A stretch of DNA of 64,000 bases, from the NCBI GenBank assembly GCA_904063045.1, contig CAJFCJ010000005.1, forward strand, positions 635,988 through 699,987. Direction: 5' to 3'. Made by a program: the position numbers and the translations under genes. This document shows positions 28,265 to 64,000 of the stretch, piece after piece. The notes under the pieces are model-generated. The model was not told the origin of the DNA, searched no databases, and worked only from the letters and a program-made list of their open reading frames with translations. How positions within the stretch are numbered: position 1 is the stretch's first letter; every line of letters starts with the position of its first letter. This DNA comes from Dimorphilus gyrociliatus (taxonomy: Eukaryota > Animalia > Annelida).

Positions 28265-29045
<781 letters not shown>

Positions 29046-50949: not shown

Positions 50950-53900
50950 TCAAGCATGAGTACTTCGGCTTGCCTCAGAGGACGAGACCCATCTTCTCTC
51001 GTTAGTTTTCGTATTGTATTCGTACATCTTACCCGTGTCTGTAACGAATTGTTTCAATGAACTCTACTCTATAAGTTCTCTTTGTTCTCTTTCACAAAAA
51101 GAGAAAATAAAACCAATCCAAATGGAAATAATCTATTTACCTGGGTCAAAAGCCGTTCCGTCGAAACCTTTACCGTTGTTGAAAGTGGGCGTAATTTCGG
51201 CCGTCGACGCCATGGATTCAGTAACGTCAGGGGTTCTAGTATTGTTATTTCTAAAGCTAGTCGATTTCGGGGGAATATTTTTCTTTTGCTGAAATTTTAA
51301 TTCAAACGCAAAAGTCAAATATTTAATTTGCCTAAATAAAGACTTTTATTATTAGATTTACCTTATTTGGTTCTCGGATTAGAAGAGTCGGAGCCACATC
51401 GACAGTTGTTAGATTATCTCTGGGTAAAATATTTGCAGGACCCTGAACACTCTTCTTTCTCGGTATAGGTGTAATTACTCTTGGCGGTTTCTTATGATTC
51501 TTATAGAGGCAATAAGATACGATAATTATTATAATAATGAGTATAATAAAGGCGGCGACGGACGAGCAAATAACCACAATTAATCCCGTCTGCGTCTCTA
51601 TCCAAGGTGTCTCTGACGACGATGTCGTTGGGTAAGGTTGAACCTGTTTTATATTGTAATCGGAAAACTCAGATCCAGTTATCGACGAACTAGGATCTCC
51701 AGTGTTCGTGTTTCCCCGCCAGGCAGTTAACAGAACATCTTTATCAATGAAACTCTTGGGATTGTCAACGTTAGATTGCAGATCACTATTAGAATCACTT
51801 AGAGCGTAAACGTATGCAGTTGTTCTGAAGTAAAATCGTTTTTATTAGTATTAATAGACATTATCTTTATTCTGCAATTGAAAAAATTGGGAAACTCACG
51901 AGGAAGATTGTAGTAATCTTCTTCTCGCTGTAACTGAACCGGAAACTGCTTCGCCACACTGATGAATAGAGGCGTTGGGATATTTAGGGGCAAGACTTTT
52001 CTTTAAACTTGCCAGAAACGAGTCAACTTTCTGATTAAACGAATCAGAAGCCATTTGGAGAACGAACGAGACGCAGACGGCAGTCTTGCTATAAGTATCA
52101 ACTCTAACAAGAGCCTTGACAGCTTTCGAAGGGGTTGCCCCATCTGATGCGGTTACCGAAATTAAATATTTTTTACCCACAGCTGCAGTTTTCCCCGATT
52201 GGAAAGTCACAATTCCTTGAGTTGGATCCACCTTAAAAAGGCCTGATTCATCCGTTATTCCGTAAGTGACTTGTCCATTTAGACCATCGTCCGGATCAGT
52301 TGCTTGGAAGGCAAACAGCTTTTTATCGGCCTTCTCGTTATAGGCAGCTTCTACACTAAGGAAGGTTTTCCCGTTGAAGCTGGGAGCGTTATCATTTTCA
52401 TCGGTTATATAAACAGTTACCGGGGTTGCTGTTGTTAGGGCCGGACTTCCTCTGTCCACAGCCAAAATATTAATTGTATACTTGCTCTGCTCTTCACGAT
52501 CCAAAGCAATCTTATTTGTTAGTGATCCAGTTGTGGAGTCTATTGAAAATTTATTAGTTAAGCTACTATCCTGAATGGAGTAGGCTATCTCTCCGTTATT
52601 TCCTGTATCTTTATCGACGGCGCTGACTTGTAAAATCGATTTGGACGTAATTTCATTTTCTTTAATATAGCCAACGTAATTGCTTGTAACGAATGCGGGT
52701 TTATTATCATTTGCGTCGGTTATTGTTATTTGAACATTGGTTTCAGAGTATAATGAACCTTGGTCGGTTGCTCTTACAAGTAGCGTGTACATATCATTTA
52801 TCTCCCTATCTAGTACTGCCTGAGGTGAAGTAGACAGATATCCCGTTACTGAATCCAATGTGAAATGTCCTGCTGGACCTTTAGAAGTTAGCTGAATAGA
52901 ATATTGAACCACTCCATTCGATCCTAAGTCTGCATCTGTTGCCTGAATTCGCCCAATAACAGTACCACCTGCGGAATTTTCCAGAACGCTGAATTGATAG
53001 CCTTGACTGAACGATGGTACAACGTCGTTGTTGTCGGAAACGACAATATTAAGGGTTGTCGTTGCGGATCTTCTTGTTGAGCCAAAATCAGACGCTCGAA
53101 CAACGACAGCGTACGATGCAATCTCCTCTCTATTAAGTACTTTCGCCAGTCTAAAGAGTCCAGTATTTGGATCCAAAGTAAAATCAAAGTTCGTATTACC
53201 ACTAACAATTTCGTATTGTAATTTTCCGTTATTATAGCTATCTTTATCGTTTGCGTCAACGTCGAAAACGGTTGATCCAACAGTTGTGTTTTCGTACAAG
53301 TTTTTCGTATATGGTAAATTAAGGAAATAGGGATCGTTATCATTCACATCACCCACATTTACAGTCACTGTTGCTGTTCCTGTTCTGGGAGTTGTTCCCG
53401 CGTCGACTGCAATTACATTCAGAACATACTGACTTTTCGTTTCTCTGTCCAGAGGATAAAGCGTATCAATGAGTACTTCATTTGTCGCGACTGTTGTCAA
53501 TCTAAAATGATTTTCAACATTTGTCGATGCAACGATAGAAAATGTTAATCTTGCATTATCCGAGGAATCGCTATCGCTGCAACTTAATTTTGTTACAGAA
53601 GTACCAACGTTAAGATTTTCAACTACTTCCACAGAGAAGTCGGTAGGTGAAAATATTGGATCGTTATCATTGACATCGTTAAGAGTTATTCTCACTGAAC
53701 AGTATGAAGATTTTTTCGGGTTTGCTCCATCTTCTGCTCGAATAAGCAAGTTGTGTACAGATTTCGCTTCAAAGTCTAAAGTTGGACTGGCAATTGTGCT
53801 GATATCGCCGTTGTTTGCGTTGATTGTAAATTGGCTTGCGCCATCACCGCCTTGAATTGCGTACGCAACCGTTCCAAAAACACCAGAATCAGCATCATTA

Positions 53901-56900
53901 GCTTGGACTTTAAATACAGAGACGCCTCCATTTAAATTCTCGTTAATTGCAACGGAATATTGATTTTGTGTGAAAACTGGATAGTTGTCGTTAACATCAA
54001 CGAGATTTATAGTAAGAGTCAGAAAATCGTAACGCGTTCCGCTAACTATAATTCCTTGATTATCGTAAACTGAAACATTCAATGTATAAGAATTCGGTGA
54101 TGTATCATAGTCCAAAATTTGGGAGACGCTCAATTTTCCTGTGACGGGATCCATGACAAAAGTTGAGTCGCTAGGATTTCCAGATACAATACCGTAACGC
54201 ATGATACCATAGGCTCCAGTATCTGAATCAGTGGCATTAGTATCATAGATTACAGTACCTACAGGAGTATCCTCTTGTAAGGTTAGAGCGTTTGTCTCTT
54301 CTGATAGAACTGGATAAAATTCGTTAACTGATAGAACATTTACAGTAATCCAGCATTGAGCTTTTAATTCAGGCGTTCCACCATCTGCAACTTCAACTTT
54401 CAATACGTAAACAGACTTCGTTTCGTGGTCGAGTTGTTTCAGTAGTCGTAATTTTTTCGTTGCATGGACAAAATCGAATGTTGAATCGTCATTACCCGAT
54501 AAGAATGTAAAAGTGTGTCCATTATTGGGAGCTAAATCATCATCTGTGGTGGTTACTGTTAGAATTTCGGTATTCAGAGCAGTAGTCTCAACAACTGAGA
54601 CAGTATAAGATGCAGGTGTAAATACAGGGTAATTATCATTATAATCGTCAACAACTATAGAGGCAGTTGTTGTTGCAGTTTTTACGTCTCCAAGAGAATC
54701 TAAGGAATCCTTTACTATTATGATCAGAGCGTAATTAGCTGTGGCTTCTCTATTCAGCGGTTGAGCCAGAAACAATTTACCATTGGTTTCATCTATGCTG
54801 AATTTGTTTTCGCTGTTTCCACCCGTGATAAAATATCTCAGTTGTTTATGAACGCCCTCGTCCGCGTCACTTGCCTGAACTGTTAAAATTTCAGCACCTC
54901 CAACAGCCATATTTTCATTAACATTTTTCACGTCGCTACTAGTTGGTGCAGTTATAAGGGGATCATTTTCATTTACAGGCTCCACTTCGACATAAACAAC
55001 GGCGGTGGCGCTTCGCTTATCAGCTGCGTTTGTTGGATTATCACTTGCGGTTATTGTTAATTGATGAAATTTAGTAGTTTCGTAGTCCAAAGCAACCGAA
55101 GTGGTTGTGATAGCTCCAGTCGACGCATCAATTGTAAATATGGAATTAGCATTTCCATTTGTAATAGCGTAAGTTACCAAATTATTGGGGCTATCCGCAT
55201 CGCTATCGGTACAAGAAACTGTGATGACAGGAGTTAGTGCAGAATTTTCTGGAAGAGATTTTGTATACGGTGCAGATGGACATGATGGAGATTTGTCATT
55301 AAAATCAGTTACGCTGACACTCAGAGTAGCTGTTCCAGTTTTCTGGTCAGCTCCTGTAGCTCCATCTACAGCCTTTATTGTTAAAACGTACTGGGCTGTT
55401 ACTTCTCTATCGAGTGTCCCTGCTAATGAGACTCTACCATTGGTTGGATGAATAGCAAACACATTATTCGTATTTCCCGCGGTTATACTGTATGTAAGTG
55501 ATCCGAATAGATCACTATCATCATCCGTCGCAACCACATCTTTTACAGACGTTCCAGAGGCATCATTCTCTACGACGCTTCCAGAATACGGAGAAGGTAA
55601 AAATGTGGGGGTTTCCTCGTTGATATTACTTATTGCAACATGAACGATAAGAGCCAAAGTTTTAGGTGTTGTTCCTTTGTCAGCCAGGGTTAGTGTAAGA
55701 GTATAGGTGGTCTTTGTTTCATAATCCAATTTAGTTTTATCTGCAATTGTAATTACACCAGCCGTTGTAGCACCAAAAAGACCGTCGGTATTTCCTGAAT
55801 TTACTGTAAATTCTAAATCTTTGTTAATACCGTCATCATTGTCGCTGCACTGCGCTCCAAGATCAATCACTTGATCTCCATTATCGGCATTCTCTGCAAT
55901 TGTTTGATAAAAAACATTTTTAGAACAAACTGGATAATTGTCGTTTTCATCGGTTATATCAATTGTTAGTGTAGCTGAACCAGTTCTCGCATTTGGACTG
56001 GGCGCTTTATCTATTGCGTGCAATGTCAATATATATTGTGCCGTGGTTTCTCTGTCTAGTTCATTTATAACTCTAACTTCGCCTGTCTTTGGGTCAATGT
56101 CAAACTTTCCGTTAGCACCAGAGGCAATTGAGTAAGCAAATTCCCCATCTATACCATCATCAGAATCTGTAGCAGAAATTGCTGCAGGAATAACTTGACC
56201 AATAGCGGTACTTTCTATCACGTTTTGCGAATAAGGTGCTGATGTAAAGGCAGGTGCTGCCTCGTTCACTCCAAGAATGTTAACCGTAACCATAACTACT
56301 GATGATAAAGATGTACCTCCCCCATCTGTTACAGTTATTTCAAAATTGTAAACTTTTTTAGTATCTTCGTAGTCGAACGAATTGCCCGTTTTCACAGTTA
56401 CTTGTCCAGTTGAAGAAACAGAAAATTTTGCTATATCGCCACTCGTTAAAGCATAAGATAATTGATTGTTATTATTAAGACTGGCGTCTGCATCTTGACA
56501 CTGCAAATTTGTTACAGTATCCCCGGGACTTATGCTTTCAGAAATTTCAACAGCAATTACTGCAGGCGTACAAACTGGAGGTTGATCGTTATCATCCGTA
56601 ACTGTTAGGGTAAGAGTGGCAGTTCCAAATTTTGGTCCTGGATTTGTTCCAGAGTCTGTAGCTCGAATTACCACCGAATGAGTCGCTGCGGCTTCCCTAT
56701 CGAGTTCTTTGAGGAGTCTTATTTCACCAGTTAGGGGGTCAATACCCATATACTCCGTATCACCAGACGTAATTGAATAAGACATTCCGTTCATTCCGTC
56801 TGGACCATCGTCCGTGTCTACAGCAGTTATCGTATGTATGACGGTGTTAATTGGTGTAGCTTCAGATTTTTGAATAGATAAAACGTTATTGGCTATGTTT

Positions 56901-59900
56901 GGTGTAATTTCATTGTAGCCTTCGATACCGATAACCACAGCAACCTCACTGGACAGTGGTCCGCCATCCTGCGCTCGAACTGTTAAAGTGAATGATTTCT
57001 CTGATTCGTAATCCAAACTCTGAGCAATTTTAATGCGGCCAAGACCATTTGAAGTATCTTTTATAATTTCCCATTTATTGTTTGTGTTACCACTTACTAT
57101 AGAGTAGGTAATTTCTCCAAATGTCAACAAATCAGTATCTGTTGCAGTAACTGTTAAAACAGTACTACCAACTGCTGTATTTTCCGAGGTTGATGTTACA
57201 TAAGCAGCTGGCGAAAAGACTGGTTTTTCATTTCGATCAAGTATAGTTATTGCTAGACTATGAGATGTTGTCTTTACAGCATCTCTCGTACCGGAATCTG
57301 TAGCAACTATGGTCAAAGTATAAGAGTCTCTCGTCTCCCTGTCGACAACGTCTTTTAGTTTTATAAGGCCAGTTTTCGGATCCATTTCAAAAGTAGTATC
57401 AGCAGGATTTATCGCATAAGTTATTGTATCAGCTGTATCAGCATCTGTAGCAGTAATTGTTAATATATCATTTCCTACAGGTGTATTTTCATAGAGATCG
57501 TGAGTGGTAGGCATTCCACCGAACACCGGAGCCGCTTCGTTAACGTCCAAAACATTAACTACGACAAGAACTGTAGTAGTAAGAGTTGGCGCTGCTCCTT
57601 GATCGGAAACTTTTACAATAATTGAATGTTGTTTTGATGTTTCATAATCGAGTGCTGTAGCAAGGGTAATAGCTCCTGTTCCACCGTTAATGGCAAATTT
57701 TCCAGTGCCTGCCACTCCATCCACAAAAGTTATTGAATATAAAAGTGTAGTTCCACTATCTGCATCACTGCATGCTGGGGTAACTATTTGAGTAGCAGGC
57801 GTGGTAGTAGCATCTTCTCGAATATTAACGGCGTATAAGCGAGGAGTGCAACTAGGCGTGTTGTCATTAACATTTCCTACATTGATTGTAACGGTCGTCG
57901 AAGCTTCTCTTGGAGTTGCGCCCCTATCTATGACTTTTACAGTTAAAGTATATGTTCTTTCACTTGGAGTTTCATAATCAACTGCCGCTTTTAACGATAT
58001 AATGCCACTCTCAGAGTCAAGCGCAAATTTTACATGATTGGCCATGCTAAAATAAAAGCTCCCGTCGGCTCCATGATCATTATCTTGGCCAGTCAGCTGA
58101 AATATACTAGAACCAGCAGCTTGATTCTCTAAGATGTTTTTGGTATATGGAGTTGAAGTAAAACTAGGAGGATTATCATTATCTGCTGTTACTGAAATTA
58201 TTACCGTACAAGATGAAGATTTAGCACCAGCAGCTCCTGCGCTATCTGTAGCAGTTATTTCAAGGGCATAAGATTTAACTGCGCTGTCATAATCCACCCC
58301 AGCATTTGTGACGGTAATCCAACCAGTTGTCGCATCTATGGCAAAGGCAGTTCCGGTATTGCCACTTGAAATGCTAAATCCAACTGTTCCATAATTATTG
58401 GTTCCTGGATCATCAGCGTCAGTTGCTGTTACTCTTACAACTTGTGTCCCTGATGTAGACTCTTCAAGTACTGTCGCTGAATATGAAGATGGATTGAAGA
58501 CCGGTGCATTATCATTTGCATCTGTCAATGTTATAACAACTTGTGCTGTTCCAGATAAAGAACCTCCATCAGTAGCTTTTACCTTGAAAGTGTATGAAGT
58601 TGGGGCTGTATCTCTATCAACAGCCTGTATGAGACTTATATCTCCATTTGAAGAAGATATAGCGAATGGTGCGTAGGAGCCTGAGTGAAAAGCATATTCC
58701 ACTTGACCATGAGAAGTATCTCCACTATCAGCATCATTAGCGGTAACGCTTACTACTACGGTACCAACACCAGTCGATTCCAGTAAATCCATAGGATAAT
58801 TTCCTGAGCTAGTGAAAATTGGAGTTGCTTCATTTACTGGTCCAACAGTTATAATGCCATCAACTGTTCGAGATAATGTTCCATCCGAGATTGTTATTCT
58901 TAAGCTGAAAGACCTATCAGCAACAGGGACTTCGAAATCTAGTTGGGCCACAGTTTGAACCTGTTTGTTTAATAAATATTGTTGAAAAATATACTCTCAG
59001 TATTTGTAAAACACTTACAACTCCTGTTGTGGATACTTTAAATTTTGTAGCATCTCCAATTGTAAGAGTGTATGTTAGGGTCGTACTTGGATCAGCATCA
59101 GAACAAGATAGATCAATAACATCATGAGGGGATGCTGGAGACGCGGTAACAGATTCTAGAACTTGCTCATTGAAAGACACTACTGTACAAGATGGTGTAC
59201 TATCATTAACATCAGTCACGGTAATAGCAATAGTTGTATCTGCTGAGTTTGTTCCAGCTTGTTCAGTAATTCTAATGCCCAAAGAATAAGACGCCACTGT
59301 TTCCCTGTTCAAAGTTGTGGCAACAGAAATTAAACCTGAGTCTGGGTCTATACTAAAAGCTCCTCCCGTATTTCCCGATTGAATAGAATAAACTCTCTTT
59401 CCATGAGGATGAGTATTGCCATCAGGGTCAGAACTGGAAGTTTGATAGACAGCTGATCCTACCACTGCTGATTCGGAAACTGGGCTTGTGTATGGTGCAC
59501 TTGTCCAAACTGGCGGACCTTCGTTAACTGCCGTAACTTGTACTGTTACAGCAATTACAACAGATTTACCAGGAGTGTCAGCAATTTGTATAGACATGGT
59601 ATGGGATGTTGTTGCTTCAAAGTTTAGAGCTGTTGTTAATCTCAATTCACCTCTCCCATGTGTTCCAGGGACGACAGCAAAATTACTATCACCAGTTATT
59701 GTAAATGCTAGCGCGGCATTAGTTCCATCGTCGGCGTCGCTGCATCCCAGGTCGCTTATTACCGTGAAAGGTAGAGATCCTGAAGCTGTCGCTTCAGCTT
59801 GCTGAAGATTATAGGCATAGGAGGTACAAATGGGACTATTATCGTTAGCATCAGTAACAACTACGGTAACAGTACCGATGGCCGGTGACGATCCTCCATC

Positions 59901-62900
59901 AGTTGCCCTTACGGAAATTTCATGCTTTTTATTACCTGTTGGTAAAGTATCATAATCTAATAGACCAGCCAATGTGATTTTTCCCGATGATTGATCAATT
60001 GTAAATTTAGAAATTCCATTATTAGTTACTGAGAGGATTGAATATTCAAGGTCTCCTTGTGGACCATGATCATCATCTGTAGCTATATAAGTAGCTATGA
60101 TTTGTCCTATTGCAATGGACTCGGTGAATGAATAACTAGGATTTGAAGCAAAGGTTGGATTATTGTCATTTTCAGCCGTAAGTGCAATAGAAACCCCAAC
60201 GCTGATTGTATCTCCAGTTGCGGTAACGTCGACTATTAGATTGTAGGTTTTTGTGGCAGAATCGTAATCTAAGCCTGTAGAAGGAGCTGGTACCGTACCC
60301 TTGTTTACCACTGTAATCACACCAGTGTTGCTATCTATTTGAAAAGCTGTTCCAGTGTTTGATGGGGATTGTATTGCATAAGATACAGCAACACCATCTG
60401 GATCAGAGCAGTCTAGATCAGCTACAGTAGTTCCAGCAGCAGTAGTTTCGGATATTTCTTTTGTTATTTGCCACGAATTTGCATTGCAAGTTGGTACATT
60501 GTCGTTAACATTAGTTACAGTTATTGTTACAGTTGCAACTTGACTCTTTACCGGAGAACCTTTATCCTTTGCAGTGATTTGAAGAGAAAATGACCTCTCT
60601 GCAACTGTTTCGTAATCGACCGGTTTAGCCAATTGAAGAGCTCCGGTGGAGGAATCAATTGTAAAGAAATTATTAGGATCTGAAGCAGTAGACTTTTCCC
60701 AAACAATGACGCCAGCATCATCGAAATCGTTGTCAGTCACTGATAAAGTTTTGAATACAACACCTACACCTTGACTTTCGGGAATCTGGTAAAAACAAAT
60801 GAATGCTTTAGTTCATTAAATCTTCTTCATTGAAAAACTATAATTACCGGTAATGATATTGTTGTTCCATCGTTGAACGACGGAGTAAAGTCGTTAACTG
60901 AAGTTATTGCAATGTAGACAGTTGCAGTTCCGGATCTGATAGGTGATGTTCCATCAGTCACTCTAACAACTAATTGATAAGAAGCAGCATCGTTTGTTGT
61001 AAGATCTGGTTCTATTGCAGTTTGAAGGAGTAAGACTTTCGTATCTCCTGTTTTCAGCCCGAATTTTGTAGTGTCCCCACTGACAATTGTATAAGTAAAA
61101 GTTGGAGTAGATTTATCGCCATCAGACGTTCCGGTGAATGTATGTAGGGTGGCGCCAGGGGTTGACGTTTCCGCCACTGGCACATGATAAACAGTACTTG
61201 AAAATTTGGGATCATTATCGTTGTAATCTTGAAGGTTTATTGTAATAGTTTTGTCCGTTGGATTCTTAGGAGTGGCTCCCTGGTCGCTCGCTCTAATTAC
61301 TAAAGTAAATGATGTAATTGGCGTTGCATCATCTGCTTCGAAAATTCCTGTCGTTTCAACATCTCCGGAGACAGGGTCAATTCTGAATAGACTTATTGCC
61401 GAGTTGGAGGAAGAGTCTAAAGCTGACACTAGTGAATAAATTATTTGACCGTCACCGCTAGCCGAGCTATCCTGATCAGTTGCTGTAGCAGTAAAAATTG
61501 AGTGACCAGATCCAACGTTTTCTAGAATAGAATGAGTTGAAGTAAATGATCCCCAAACCGGTGTATGTTCATTTACTGGATTTACAAGTACAATTATTTT
61601 AACGGTAGCCACTTGAACAGGAGCATTTCCGCCATTGTCATTAATTGTTATTGTAAGTTCGTATCTAGATTTTGTTTCATAATCAAGTGCTGTAGCTGAA
61701 GTTTTCAACTAAAACGTGTAAAAAATAAAGAATTAGTTTGAAACGAATGAAAAATAAGCGTCTAAATGGTATTTTACATCAGCTCCAGTAGCTTTTGATA
61801 CTATCTTGAATTTAGCTGTTGGGTCGTCATTGGAAATCGTATATGAATGAATAGTTCCGAAGGCACCTGAATCGGCATCGGAGCACAATATTTCTTGTAC
61901 AGGAGTATCTGTTTCCAATTGAAATATTATATATAGAATACTCTACGTAGACAGTATAAGACAAATCTTACTATCAGGAGAATTTTCATCCACATTTGCA
62001 ACATAAACTGATTGTGTACATGTTGGCTTGTTGTCATTAGAATCGACAACATTAAAGGTAGCAACATAGTCAACCTGGACATTTAAATCGTTTTTATTTT
62101 TTTAAATAAGATTTTAAGCATTAAAAATTATTTTAAGCAAAACTGACTGTTTTCACTGGCGATCCTGCATCTGAGGCGCGTACTGTAACTGCGTATGTTG
62201 TTTGTGTCTCGTAGTCAAGTGATTTGGCAAGAAAAATTTCTCCGGTTGAAGACGAAATTGTAAAGTAATCAGCGCCACTATTTGTAACTGATATGATTTG
62301 ATAGGATAGTGATCCATCTGCTCCATGATCAGCATCTGAGGCCGCATATGTAAGTATAGAATAACCAGCTATACTTGTTTCAGCCACATTCTCAGCTGCT
62401 GGATTTGATGCGGTAGGGGTGTTGTCATTTATTCCAGTTAATAAAATGGTTACTGGTATATCAACGTAATCACTACCCCCAGTCACTCTCACAACTAGGG
62501 AATAGAATTTGGTAGCTGAATCGTAATCCAAAAGTGTGGCTCCAGATCCTTGGTCTTTAACCTTGAGGCTACCTGCAGCGGAGATTTCAAAAGCAGATCC
62601 ACCACCACTTTGAATAGCATACGTCATGCTTTCTCCTTCCGGTTCGGTACAATCAATTAGTACTACCTAAACGAAAAATTGACTTTGAAGATCAGATAAT
62701 GGACACAAAAAAAACAAATTATATATTACTTACTTGAGTATTGGCAGCCGTATTTTCGGCCAATACAAGAGTGTGAGTGTATGATGTACAAGTTGGCGCC
62801 TTATCAGAAACATCAGTAACACTAACCGTTAGTGATACTGTCGCAGACAGAGATCCTGAATCTGTTACTTTATAGTTCAATGAAAAGTACTTGTTGGGCG

Positions 62901-64000
62901 TAAGAGTGTCATAGTCTAACGCTTTTCTCAAATAAATATTTCCATTTGTACTGTCGATATGAAAGTATTCTCCAGTATCCGATCCTGCTACTTTGGTAAA
63001 AGTTAAGACATCGCCATAGTCGGCATCACTGGCGGCAACTGCTCCAATTAGATCGCCTACTGATGTAGTTTCCGGAATCTATAATATGAACGAAAAGAAA
63101 AACAGTTTAAAAAAGCATTAATTATTATTGCATATATTACTAACAGAAATATCGGCTGGACTTGGAGTTGTAAATGATGGGCCAGCATCATTTGTTGGTG
63201 TAATTGTTATATAAGCAACAGACTGAGACGTCTGTACTCCATCACCAACAGTACAAAGTAATGTATATTTAGTTGTTGGAGTTCCACCACCATCTAAATT
63301 GAATGCTGCCAGTGTTTGAATTCTACCCGAACTTGTAATAGAGAATTTTGACAATGCAGCACCACTTGATCCAGTTAAAGAGTATGAATAAATTGCCGTC
63401 GTTGCATCATTGTCCGTGACGACAACATCTAAAACACTTGTTGAAGGTGCGGAATTTTCCGGAATTGCAACATTATAGACATTAGAATCTAAGGATGGTA
63501 CTTCATCGTTAACATCTTGAACGTTTATCCTAATACTGGTAGTTGTTGCAGAAGCGGCTGGTTTAGTTCCCCGATCACTTGCTTTTACAGATAGCGTATA
63601 ATATTCAACCCCTACACCAGTTCCGTCTCGTTGAAGTTGACTGCTAGTCCTAATAATACCAGTTTTGGGATCGCAGCTGAAGTGTGCCAAAGACGATGTT
63701 GATCCGCCAACTGGTTAAAGAGTATAATTAATAATAAATATATGTAATAATGTACATAAAATATGGTAATTCATTTTCTTACCTAAGGTTGCAGTAGTTG
63801 ACTCTATTGTGAATACTATTTCAGAATCTATTTCCCCGCTTCGATCACTATCAGATGCCGCCAGCGTGAGAACCAATTGACCAATATTAGCTGCTTCAGA
63901 AACATCGTACGGGCTACTTAAAGAACCCCAAGTTGGAGAATTATCGTTTACCGGCTGGACATCTACTATAACTTTTATGGATGAGGTCAACCGAGGAGTG
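50950..64000 (-). CDS. Giant cadherin-repeat single-pass membrane protein (5'-incomplete; >=4090 aa in window)
   Basis: Exons >64000-63783, 63710-63145, 63078-62734, 62666-62148, 62074-61972, 61908-61778, 61708-60848, 60785-59019, 58960-51900, 51824-51362, 51288-51141, 51038-50950; GT-AG introns of 58-102 bp with consistent phases. 35 DxND/xxNE linkers counted, with DxD and LDYE/LDRE motifs; TM GLIVVICSSVAAFIILIIIIIVSYCLY; TGA at 50950-50952. Confidence 0.93.

What the first reader, a model, noticed from the sequence alone, without database searches (positions are those of the whole stretch)
50950..64000. Giant cadherin that fits none of the classical families
At least ~36 cadherin repeats are present (35 linkers counted) and the gene continues past the window, exceeding Fat (34), Dachsous (27) and CDH23 (27). 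There are no EGF or laminin-G domains before the TM, and no catenin-binding or recognisable Fat/Ds/protocadherin cytoplasmic motif. Instead the protein has a non-cadherin juxtamembrane domain with RRRLL, a TM and a ~115-aa tail ending in a WW-like module. Together these suggest an uncharacterised, possibly spiralian, very long tether or mechanoreceptor that could be cleaved and signal through its tail.
Basis: partly seen in the sequence, partly recalled or inferred. Interest (0 to 1): 0.72.

Follow-up and report, generated by a model that had tools for sequence, protein, structure and literature searches.

The report
Giant MAD-anchored cadherin with WW-like tail
This is a real, conserved gene for a roughly 6,300-residue cell-surface filament of 56 cadherin repeats, anchored like the ear's tip-link cadherins and ending inside the cell in a WW-like domain; it belongs to an unnamed family shared by annelids, molluscs, acorn worms and amphioxus.

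Summary
The minus strand carries an intact multi-exon cadherin gene. About 35 EC repeats lie in the window and 20 more upstream, 56 in all. The start codon is about 8,965 bases beyond the window end and the stop is at 50950-50952.

Pfam finds no EGF, LamG or catenin-binding domain. A related species keeps every 3' exon and the stop, and dN/dS is about 0.06.

- The family is not spiralian-specific. The MAD-TM module, and in 35 of the proteins I collected also the C-terminal motif, occur in molluscs, hemichordates and amphioxus. These proteins carry inconsistent automatic names.
- The WW-like tail is supported: profile-profile probability 93.7% against genuine WW domains, and a confident three-stranded model. 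It stays below the Pfam threshold.
- RRRLL is a conserved R-x-L-L motif in a flexible MAD loop. It fits site-1 protease better than furin, but cleavage is untested.

No RNA evidence was obtained. Other giant cadherins were already noted elsewhere in this genome.

The parts
50950..51038 (-). Last coding exon. It holds strands 2-3 of the WW-like domain (motif YEYNTKTNERRW), 12 further residues, and the TGA stop at 50950-50952.
   Evidence: Sequence reading. Exon and stop are conserved in the related species. It aligns to the family tail motif. It is the best own-genome hit of the tail profile, E 2e-11.
51039..51140 (-). Intron (gtaaat...ttacag, phase 1) that splits the WW-like domain.
   Evidence: It is poorly conserved between the two species (28 of 90 columns).
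51141..51288 (-). Tail exon of 49 codons plus 1 nt. It ends with the first strand of the WW-like domain (FDGTAFDP, from 51165).
51289..51361 (-). Unusually conserved 73-nt intron. If retained, it adds 9 codons and a stop at the same place in both species.
   Evidence: 74 of 90 columns are identical here, against 28-50 in the other introns.
51362..51824 (-). Exon holding the second half of the MAD (beta3-alpha2-beta4), the S/T-rich stalk with the PWIETQTG motif (51584-51607), the TM and the first 47 tail residues, including PPR.
   Evidence: Profile A2, built on this exon, found 102 representative proteins.
51503..51586 (-). Transmembrane helix, followed by KNHKK (type I orientation).
   Evidence: Weak TM-type Pfam hits only.
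51825..51896 (-). 72-nt intron (gtgagt...acttcag, phase 2) inside the MAD.
   Evidence: The C2 paralogue has no intron at this position.
51897..52093 (-). First half of the MAD (beta1-alpha1-beta2 and the loop).
   Evidence: It aligns to the module HMM and has 40% identity to the paralogue. The fold is taken from the paralogue model.
51911..51925 (-). RRRLL: the R-x-L-L motif in the beta2-beta3 loop of the MAD, a candidate site-1 protease site.
   Evidence: One search gives the coordinates. The motif is present in 28 of 43 family modules. The loop has low pLDDT in the model. RRLL is called the optimal SKI-1/S1P motif in PMC8310232.
51897..58960 (-). Giant exon of 7,064 nt: the end of EC35, EC36-EC56, and the first half of the MAD.
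   Evidence: It is 78% identical at protein level to the orthologous exon, with dN/dS about 0.06.
58961..59018 (-). 58-nt intron (gtaagt...aaacag).
   Evidence: The relative has a 46-nt intron at the same place.
59019..64000 (-). Upstream exons separated by short introns, encoding EC21/22 to EC35. The gene continues to an ATG about 8,965 nt beyond the window end.

Best explanation
What it is. The locus is an intact, selectively constrained gene for a type I membrane protein of about 6,300 residues. In order it has a signal peptide, 56 extracellular cadherin repeats, a ferredoxin-like membrane-adjacent domain (MAD), a short S/T-rich stalk ending in PWIETQTG, one TM helix, and a tail of about 125 residues. 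The last ~30 residues of the tail form a divergent WW domain in which the first Trp is replaced by Phe. It is the annelid member of an unnamed bilaterian family also seen in molluscs, hemichordates and amphioxus. The family is defined by this MAD-TM module and, in the 35 collected members where the tail is present, the C-terminal motif.

Likely mechanism (inferred, not shown).
- It probably works like the EC(n)-MAD-TM link cadherins CDH23, PCDH15 and CDHR2. If straight it would be a calcium-stiffened filament of about 250 nm that bears tension between membranes or protrusions.
- The MAD would form the bent, possibly dimerising and mechanically weak base.
- The conserved R-x-L-L in the exposed MAD loop would be cut by site-1 protease in the secretory pathway. 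This would leave a non-covalently held heterodimer that force could separate.
- The WW-like end would dock proline-rich cytoplasmic partners.
For: Shown here:
- Repeats and order of domains.
- Signal peptide and ATG.
- 3' exons, TM and stop.
- An orthologue in Logan run SRR23372228 with the same exons and stop, diverged introns, 78% protein identity, pN 0.14 against pS 0.73, and dN/dS about 0.06.
- The module family: 102 representatives. Thirty that I looked up come from molluscs, hemichordates and amphioxus.

MAD:
- Foldseek top hits are PCDH15 MAD12 (E 2e-5) and CDH23 MAD28 (E 1e-4).

WW-like tail:
- The window's two tail exons align column for column with the family motif.
- The model has three strands at pLDDT about 90.
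- Nearly all of the first ~35 Foldseek rows are WW domains, with rmsd 0.7-3 A in the better rows and 30-41% identity.
- Apart from one paralogue, the tail profile's next hits in the 78-Mb genome are genuine WW domains.
- hhalign against those WW domains gives probability 93.7%, E 2e-7.

R-x-L-L loop:
- 28 of 43 modules have the motif in the loop. One has RRRKR instead, and the rest lack the loop.
- RRLL is described as the optimal SKI-1/S1P motif (PMC8310232).
- The genome encodes an S1P orthologue (MBTPS1 domains, E 1e-109).
Against:
- The MAD was folded on a paralogue about 40% identical, and the WW-like domain on a bivalve homologue.
- WW scores stay below the Pfam gathering score (12.8-16 bits against 26.9).
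- Foldseek E-values for the tiny domain are 0.5-2, and VIA-align found nothing.
- Cleavage at R-x-L-L is inferred from a motif alone, and bivalve members lack the loop.
- About half of the EC linkers lack the first Asp of DxNDN, so rigidity is uncertain.
- Tissue, binding partner and ligand are unknown.
Confidence: 0.6

Rival explanations
1. It is simply a much-expanded orthologue of a named family, CDH23 (or fly Cad88C, often called the fly CDH23), so nothing new is present beyond repeat number.
Against: - Amphioxus and Saccoglossus have separate genes called CDH23 and CDH88C in PMC10734073 (BfCDH23 XP_035670190, BfCDH88C XP_035669276, SkCDH23 XP_006822896). Their accessions differ from those of the family members found here (XP_035676136, XP_006817814, XP_006812445).
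- The FASTA supplement of that paper (CDH23, CDH88C, PCDH15, Fat and Dachsous of ten species) contains none of the tail words ERRW, YEYN or YNTKT.
- The module profile has no sequence-level hit to the CDH23 or PCDH15 chains in the PDB.
- No arthropod, echinoderm or vertebrate protein is among the 30 representatives I looked up or the 13 word-search hits.
- I could not obtain a Cad88C sequence by reference, so no direct alignment was made.
Confidence: 0.12
2. The architecture is as described, but the two motifs have no special function. R-x-L-L would be a structural loop element that is never cleaved. The C-terminal beta-sheet would be a docking or sorting signal, not a proline-binding WW domain.
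For: Bivalve members do without the loop. WW scores are sub-threshold and the first Trp is missing. hhalign aligns only 23 columns. No experiment bears on either motif.
Against: - In the R-x-L-L motif the P4 Arg and both Leu are kept across four phyla, within an otherwise variable, low-confidence loop.
- One snail protein has a furin-type RRRKR at the same place.
- The Tyr and Trp that form the proline groove of WW domains are nearly invariant in the family.
- 22 of 35 tails carry PPP, PPR or PPxY motifs.
Confidence: 0.25
3. It is a Fat/Dachsous-type planar-polarity cadherin with a divergent tail, as the automatic name 'protocadherin Fat 4-like' given to many homologues suggests.
For: The best word-search hits for the last repeats are FAT4 and Dachsous/PCDH16 proteins. 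Sub-threshold Cadherin_FAT4_N and CELSR2-type Pfam hits occur.
Against: Those scores are sums over many generic EC repeats. There is no EGF or LamG between the last EC and the TM. No Cadherin_C is found. None of the 119 Fat4/Dachsous/PCDH16 proteins has the module or the tail motif.
Confidence: 0.02
4. It is a decaying or mis-assembled repeat array and not a functional gene.
For: No expression data were obtained. The repeats are long and similar, which can be prone to assembly error.
Against: - There is a 2,354-codon exon without a stop, open in both species, with dN/dS about 0.06.
- All 56 repeats are in order, with complementary partial hits across introns.
- Repeats are only 30-49% identical to one another, so collapse is unlikely.
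- Signal peptide, TM, stop and splice sites are all in place.
Confidence: 0.01

Closest known systems
Protocadherin-15 and cadherin-23 (tip-link cadherins) and CDHR2/PCDH24 (intermicrovillar link): the EC(n)-MAD-TM cadherins
   Different: It has 56 repeats against 11, 27 and 9. MAD sequence identity is only 12-20%, with no profile-level sequence hit. A conserved R-x-L-L loop and a PWIETxTG stalk motif are present. The tail is unrelated and ends in a WW-like domain, not the harmonin/PDZ-binding or CD1-3 tails (own knowledge). The N-terminal domain has no recognisable match. Amphioxus and hemichordates have separate CDH23 and PCDH15 genes.
WW domains of the FBP11/PRPF40 and Pin1 type (Pfam PF00397)
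   Same: A three-stranded sheet. The G-[KR]-x-Y-x-Y-N-x-x-T-x-x-x-x-W core matches these domains, and the groove Tyr and second Trp are kept. hhalign gives 93.7% against this genome's own PRPF40-like WW domains. The top Foldseek rows are Pin1, Prp40, FBP11, FBP28 and YAP WW domains.
   Different: The first Trp is Phe/Tyr and loop 1 is two residues longer. There is no trailing Pro. Scores are below the Pfam threshold. It sits at the extreme C-terminus of a transmembrane cadherin; my literature searches found no report of a cadherin with a WW domain, which is weak negative evidence.
Notch negative regulatory region (HD domain, furin S1 site) and SEA-domain receptors
   Different: These scores are much lower than for cadherin MADs. 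There are no LNR modules and no G/SVVV autoproteolysis motif. The motif fits S1P (R-x-L-L), not furin (R-x-K/R-R). Cleavage has not been shown.
Fat, Fat-like and Dachsous giant cadherins
   Same: Very many EC repeats. Automatic annotation names homologues 'Fat 4-like'. Fat and CELSR are also predicted to have a MAD after the last EC.
   Different: No EGF/LamG, no Fat or Dachsous tail, and none of 119 such proteins has this module or tail motif.

Membership tests
Cadherin superfamily | Tandem extracellular cadherin repeats (PF00028) with calcium-binding linkers | tested here: met
   PF00028 at E = 0 with 21 stretches in one exon, and hits in all other exons. 56 repeats by the gene's own HMM. 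21 of 52 linkers are canonical D-x-N-[DE]-x; the others mostly keep x-V-N-[DE].
MAD-bearing link cadherins (PCDH15 / CDH23 / CDHR2 architecture) | [quoted passage not shown] | tested here: met
MAD-bearing link cadherins (PCDH15 / CDH23 / CDHR2 architecture) | No EGF or LamG modules between the repeats and the membrane | tested here: met
   Pfam scans of all pieces.
CDH23 orthologues | Orthology: the gene is the CDH23 of its genome and groups with CDH23 of other species | tested here: not met
   Family members in amphioxus and Saccoglossus are different genes from those called CDH23 in PMC10734073. No tail-motif word occurs in that paper's sequences. No sequence-level hit to CDH23 chains. No tree was built.
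CDH23 orthologues | 27 EC repeats and a tail with a C-terminal PDZ-binding motif and harmonin-binding region (own knowledge) | tested here: not met
   56 repeats. The tail ends in the WW-like domain plus 12 residues (...STHA), and family C-termini are not conserved beyond the WW-like domain.
Cad88C family | Sequence similarity to Drosophila Cad88C and its orthologues | tested here: inconclusive
   No Cad88C sequence was available by reference. Indirect evidence: BfCDH88C is a different accession, and the supplement of PMC10734073 lacks the tail words. No arthropod or echinoderm is among the 30 representatives I looked up or the 13 word-search hits.
Fat / Fat-like | EGF and LamG modules after the repeats, and a Fat-type tail | tested here: not met
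Classical cadherins / Dachsous | Catenin-binding type cytoplasmic domain (PF01049) | tested here: not met
   No PF01049 on the TM exon or tail exons at E up to 10.
WW domain (PF00397) | Pfam score above the gathering threshold, and two Trp 20-22 residues apart | tested here: not met
   12.8-16 bits against 26.9 on three homologue tails, covering profile positions 8-30 only. The first Trp is Phe/Tyr.
WW domain (PF00397) | Three-stranded antiparallel sheet with the groove Tyr and C-terminal Trp, and detectable homology to genuine WW domains | tested here: met
   Strands 16-20, 26-31 and 36-39 at pLDDT about 90. WW domains fill the top Foldseek rows. hhalign 93.7%. Y28 and W39 are nearly invariant. 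Peptide binding is not testable here.
Site-1 protease (SKI-1/S1P) substrates | R-x-hydrophobic-Leu motif (optimal RRLL) in an accessible luminal loop, and actual cleavage | tested here: inconclusive
   The motif is present and conserved in 28 of 43 modules in a low-pLDDT loop. The motif definition comes from PMC8310232. An S1P gene is present. Cleavage cannot be tested with these tools.
SEA domain | SEA fold with the G/S-[VI]-V-V autoproteolysis site | tested here: not met

The most novel reading that the evidence does not exclude
An ancient bilaterian class of force-bearing giant cadherins works as a self-contained mechanosignalling unit. Site-1 protease pre-cuts the MAD loop, as furin pre-cuts Notch, so that tension can shed the 56-repeat filament. 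The remaining stub then signals through its own cytoplasmic WW domain, for example by capturing PPxY proteins. A retained-intron isoform without the WW domain could serve as a silent anchor. I found no report of a cadherin with a built-in WW domain or with S1P processing.
Probability: 0.2. Interest if true: 0.8.

Novelty: new variant of a known kind. Interest (0 to 1): 0.55.

Why it matters
Long link cadherins with a membrane-adjacent domain are so far known mainly from vertebrate hair-cell tip links and gut brush borders. This family shows that the same chassis exists, much longer, in annelids, molluscs, acorn worms and amphioxus.

It also has two conserved additions that make clear predictions. 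One is a protease-type loop inside the mechanically weak anchor domain. The other is a WW-like adaptor domain at the cytoplasmic end. Both can be tested with a few recombinant fragments.

The family appears to have been missed by cadherin surveys. It is not in the sequence set of the one echinoderm-centred survey I could check (PMC10734073). In public annotation it is hidden under contradictory automatic names (Fat 4-like, cadherin-23-like, CELSR1-like, DS-like), so naming it would tidy the invertebrate cadherin repertoire.

Tried and rejected
- I redid the step from files.
- **Spliced model.** The model was never joined. All searches, scans and folds used single exons by reference, or contiguous paralogue or homologue proteins. 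Pfam or AlphaFold on the window's own whole MAD or WW-like domain was therefore left out.
- **First acceptor guess.** My first guess for the TM-exon acceptor (ctctaag) was wrong. Paralogues showed a missing strand, and the acceptor is acttcag at 51825.
- **PDB sequence searches.** Searches of the exon pieces and of the module profile found nothing, as did a search with the N-terminal exon.
- **Word searches.** A word search restricted to the 74 non-cadherin residues found only the orthologue fragment. The first word search was swamped by summed EC scores.
- **Alignment A1.** It misplaced the exon fragments and was discarded in favour of A2.
- **S1P prodomain.** A look for an RRLL autoprocessing site in the worm S1P prodomain was uninformative.
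- **Furin.** Furin as the protease was considered and ranked below S1P. P4 is Ala, Gly, Ser or Asn when cleavage is placed after the basic run, whereas R-x-L-L is the invariant pattern.
Full report
**1. Observation**

The window is AT-rich animal DNA with short introns. It lies at G000:C5:635988-699987 in a 77.9-Mb assembly.

On the minus strand, ORFs from 51896 to 63990 are full of cadherin repeats. Pfam PF00028 scores E = 0 with 21 stretches in the 2,351-codon ORF and also hits the upstream ORFs.

I fetched 29 kb beyond the window. I then scanned all minus-strand open frames with an HMM built from 11 of the gene's own repeats.
- Hits run in order from extended coordinate 71,962 to 52,097.
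- Where a repeat is split by a short gap, the two partial hits are complementary (for example model positions 1-46 then 47-105), as expected for in-frame introns.
- A hand count and an automatic count both give 56 repeats.

**2. Gene model**

The start is an ATG at extended coordinate 72,965. It is followed by a hydrophobic signal peptide and a gtaagt donor. The first exon-2 domain has no Pfam or PDB match.

A 58-nt intron (59018-58961) precedes a single exon of 7,064 nt (58960-51897).

The 3' end is as follows.
- The giant exon ends at ...RRRLLQSS, and a 72-nt intron follows.
- Exon 51824-51362 holds a beta strand, a helix, an S/T-rich stalk ending in PWIETQTG, the TM (51586-51503), KNHKK and 47 tail residues.
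- Next comes a 73-nt intron, then exon 51288-51141, a 102-nt intron, and exon 51038-50950 ending in TGA.
- The tail is about 125 residues.

I first chose a wrong acceptor for the TM exon. Two paralogues showed that a strand was missing, and this fixed the acceptor at 51824/51825.

Pfam finds no EGF, LamG, Cadherin_C or any other domain on these exons.

Of the 52 linkers scored, 21 have the canonical D-x-N-[DE]-x. Most others keep x-V-N-[DE] with Pro, Gly or Ser in place of the first Asp. The two kinds often alternate.

**3. It is a working gene**

A word search found one close relative, a 2,337-residue ORF from Logan assemblies of SRR23372228/9. That contig aligns to the window's 3' region. 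All four exons and the stop are conserved, while the introns have diverged.

Over the giant exon, protein identity is 78%, pN is 0.14 and pS is 0.73 (saturated). This gives dN/dS of about 0.06.

Earlier notes of this scan name the organism as the annelid Dimorphilus gyrociliatus and describe other giant cadherins in it. I did not verify the species.

**4. The juxtamembrane domain is a MAD**

The two non-cadherin pieces have no PDB sequence match. A word search found no homologue apart from the orthologue.

In the worm's own genome they match three other loci.
- C2 is about 40% identical, and there the domain is not split by an intron.
- C23 is a second paralogue.
- C14 is a weak match.

A profile of the TM exon and these paralogues (A2) was searched against 1.84 billion representatives. 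It gave 102 proteins, 28 of them at E up to 1e-10.

A 43-sequence alignment (A3) was used to fold the C2 paralogue's module. [quoted passage not shown]

|---|---|---|
| PCDH15 MAD12 (6eet, 6c10, 6bxz) | 2e-5 to 4e-5 | 13.0 / 12.7 / 12.2 |
| CDH23 MAD28 (8tri) | 1e-4 | 11.7 |
| Nup54 | 8e-5 | 11.3-11.8 |
| CELSR1 | not in the top rows | 8.6 |
| Notch HD, dystroglycan, SEA, collectrin-like | about 0.04-0.3 where listed | at most 7.8 |

Nup54 is the known structural twin of MAD12 (bioRxiv 10.1101/460097).

The window's two halves align to the module HMM at 30-38% identity to homologues. The relation is visible only at fold level (12-20% identity; profile against PDB sequences negative).

**5. The tail ends in a WW-like domain**

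Among the collected proteins, 35 have both the module and a C-terminal motif of the form FDGxAxDP...G[KR]xYEYNTKTNERRW. It always lies 0-47 residues from the end.

The end of the window's penultimate exon and its last exon align to this motif column by column (A4).

- *Pfam.* WW scores only 12.8-16 bits on three homologue tails, against a threshold of 26.9.
- *AlphaFold.* The bivalve tail, folded with A4, gives three strands at pLDDT about 90.
- *Foldseek.* Nearly all of the first ~35 rows are WW domains (Pin1, Prp40, FBP11, FBP28, YAP, Nedd4L). In the better rows rmsd is 0.7-3 A and identity is 30-41%. E is only 0.5-2 because the domain is tiny. VIA-align found nothing.
- *Own-genome search.* A4 finds this gene, the C23 paralogue, and then three genuine WW-domain genes.
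- *hhalign.* A4 against those WW domains gives probability 93.7%, E 2e-7 over 23 columns.

The groove Tyr and the second Trp are nearly invariant. The first Trp is Phe or Tyr.

Twenty-two of the 35 tails carry PPP, PPR or PPxY motifs, and the window's tail has PPR.

**6. The RRRLL motif**

In A3, 28 of 43 modules have R-x-L-L (mostly RRLL or RKLL) in the beta2-beta3 loop, which has low confidence in the model. One snail protein has RRRKR there. The remaining 14 have a short loop without the motif.

The invariant pattern is Arg at P4 and Leu at P2 and P1. This is the site-1 protease motif, and RRLL is called its optimal motif in PMC8310232. Furin would need Arg at P4 of a basic run, which is absent here.

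The genome encodes an S1P orthologue with all MBTPS1 domains, as well as several furin-like convertases.

Cleavage itself is an inference.

**7. Family and relation to known cadherins**

The 30 representatives I looked up come from these groups.
- Gastropods and bivalves: Physella, Lymnaea, Bulinus, Haliotis, Patella, Babylonia, Mya, Dreissena, Ylistrum.
- Hemichordates: Saccoglossus, Glandiceps, Ptychodera.
- Amphioxus.

A further word search added bivalve members of up to 5,570 residues.

Their automatic names are contradictory: Fat 4-like, cadherin-23-like, CELSR1-like, DS-like.

None of the 119 Fat4/Dachsous/PCDH16 proteins has the module or the tail motif.

A survey of the bilaterian cadherin toolkit (PMC10734073) assigns other accessions to amphioxus CDH23 and CDH88C and to Saccoglossus CDH23. 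Its sequence supplement contains none of the tail words. The family therefore seems to have been overlooked.

I could not align it directly with fly Cad88C. My literature searches found no cadherin with a WW domain.

**8. How it probably works**

*Shown:*
- the domain order;
- strong purifying selection;
- the MAD fold (on a paralogue);
- the WW-like fold (on a homologue);
- conservation of the motifs across four phyla.

*Inferred:*
- a calcium-dependent filament of about 250 nm (56 x about 4.5 nm, own knowledge) that links membranes or protrusions under load, as CDH23, PCDH15 and CDHR2 do;
- a MAD acting as a bent, dimerising, mechanically weak base;
- S1P processing of the loop;
- recruitment of proline-rich partners by the tail.

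The tissue, the extracellular partner and the cytoplasmic ligand are all unknown.

**9. Limits**

- Exons were never joined, so the window's own MAD and WW-like domain were not scanned or folded as wholes.
- Only 30 of the 102 representatives were looked up for names, so absence from arthropods, echinoderms, cnidarians and vertebrates is not established.
- No tree was built.

Noticed in passing
window 51289-51361: The 73-nt intron between the TM exon and the first tail exon is far better conserved with the related species (74 of 90 columns) than the other introns (28-50 of 90). If retained, it adds 9 codons and a stop at the same position in both species. This could give a short-tail isoform without the WW-like domain, or it could be a splicing control element.
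   Followed up: partly
window 52097-64000 and L002 (upstream 8 kb): Only 21 of 52 scored EC linkers are canonical D-x-N-[DE]-x. The others mostly read P/G/S-V-N-[DE], and over long stretches the two kinds alternate. This suggests alternating full and partial calcium sites.
   Followed up: partly
extended coordinates about 57,000-71,300 (window 57,000-64,000 plus L002): There is a weak period-6 (and 12) similarity among repeats: EC3/EC9/EC21 at 42-45% and EC7/EC19/EC31/EC37 at 40-49%, against a 30% background. This agrees with another first-stage note of a six-EC super-repeat (s1-082584). The duplication is old, not recent.
   Followed up: partly
window 58,953-63,480 versus L005:5809-9954: A stretch that is one uninterrupted 1,381-codon exon in the related species is broken here by at least three or four short introns. 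This implies intron gain or loss between close relatives.
   Followed up: partly
G000:C23:561085-561996 (L009, L015, L017): A paralogue has the full family signature: MAD with RRRLLQ, PWIETTTG, a TM, and a WW-like last exon with YEYNSKTGERRW. The C2 paralogue (L013) has the MAD and TM, but the genome-wide tail-profile search found no WW-like exon on C2. Its downstream sequence was only skimmed.
   Followed up: partly
P0161 (Bulinus truncatus KAH9503770.1), MAD loop: In this snail family member the loop carries a furin-type RRRKR in place of R-x-L-L. This fits the idea that the loop is a convertase processing site.
   Followed up: no
G000:C3:2096342-2099002 (L023:1108-3768): A site-1 protease (MBTPS1) orthologue in one open frame of 887 codons or more, with MBTP1_N, Peptidase_S8 and the MBTPS1 third and fourth domains.
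   Followed up: partly
G000:C16:117257-118204 (L018:940-1887) and G000:C5:1285740-1286213 (L019:1192-1665): Genuine WW-domain genes: a PRPF40/FBP11-like gene with two WW domains, and a second gene with at least two WW domains in L019. They served here as the WW reference set.
   Followed up: no
window 16495-21249 and 28265-29045: Other first-stage notes on this window report NDFIP and Sprouty lying tail to tail, and a fossil flavin monooxygenase. I did not examine them.
   Followed up: no
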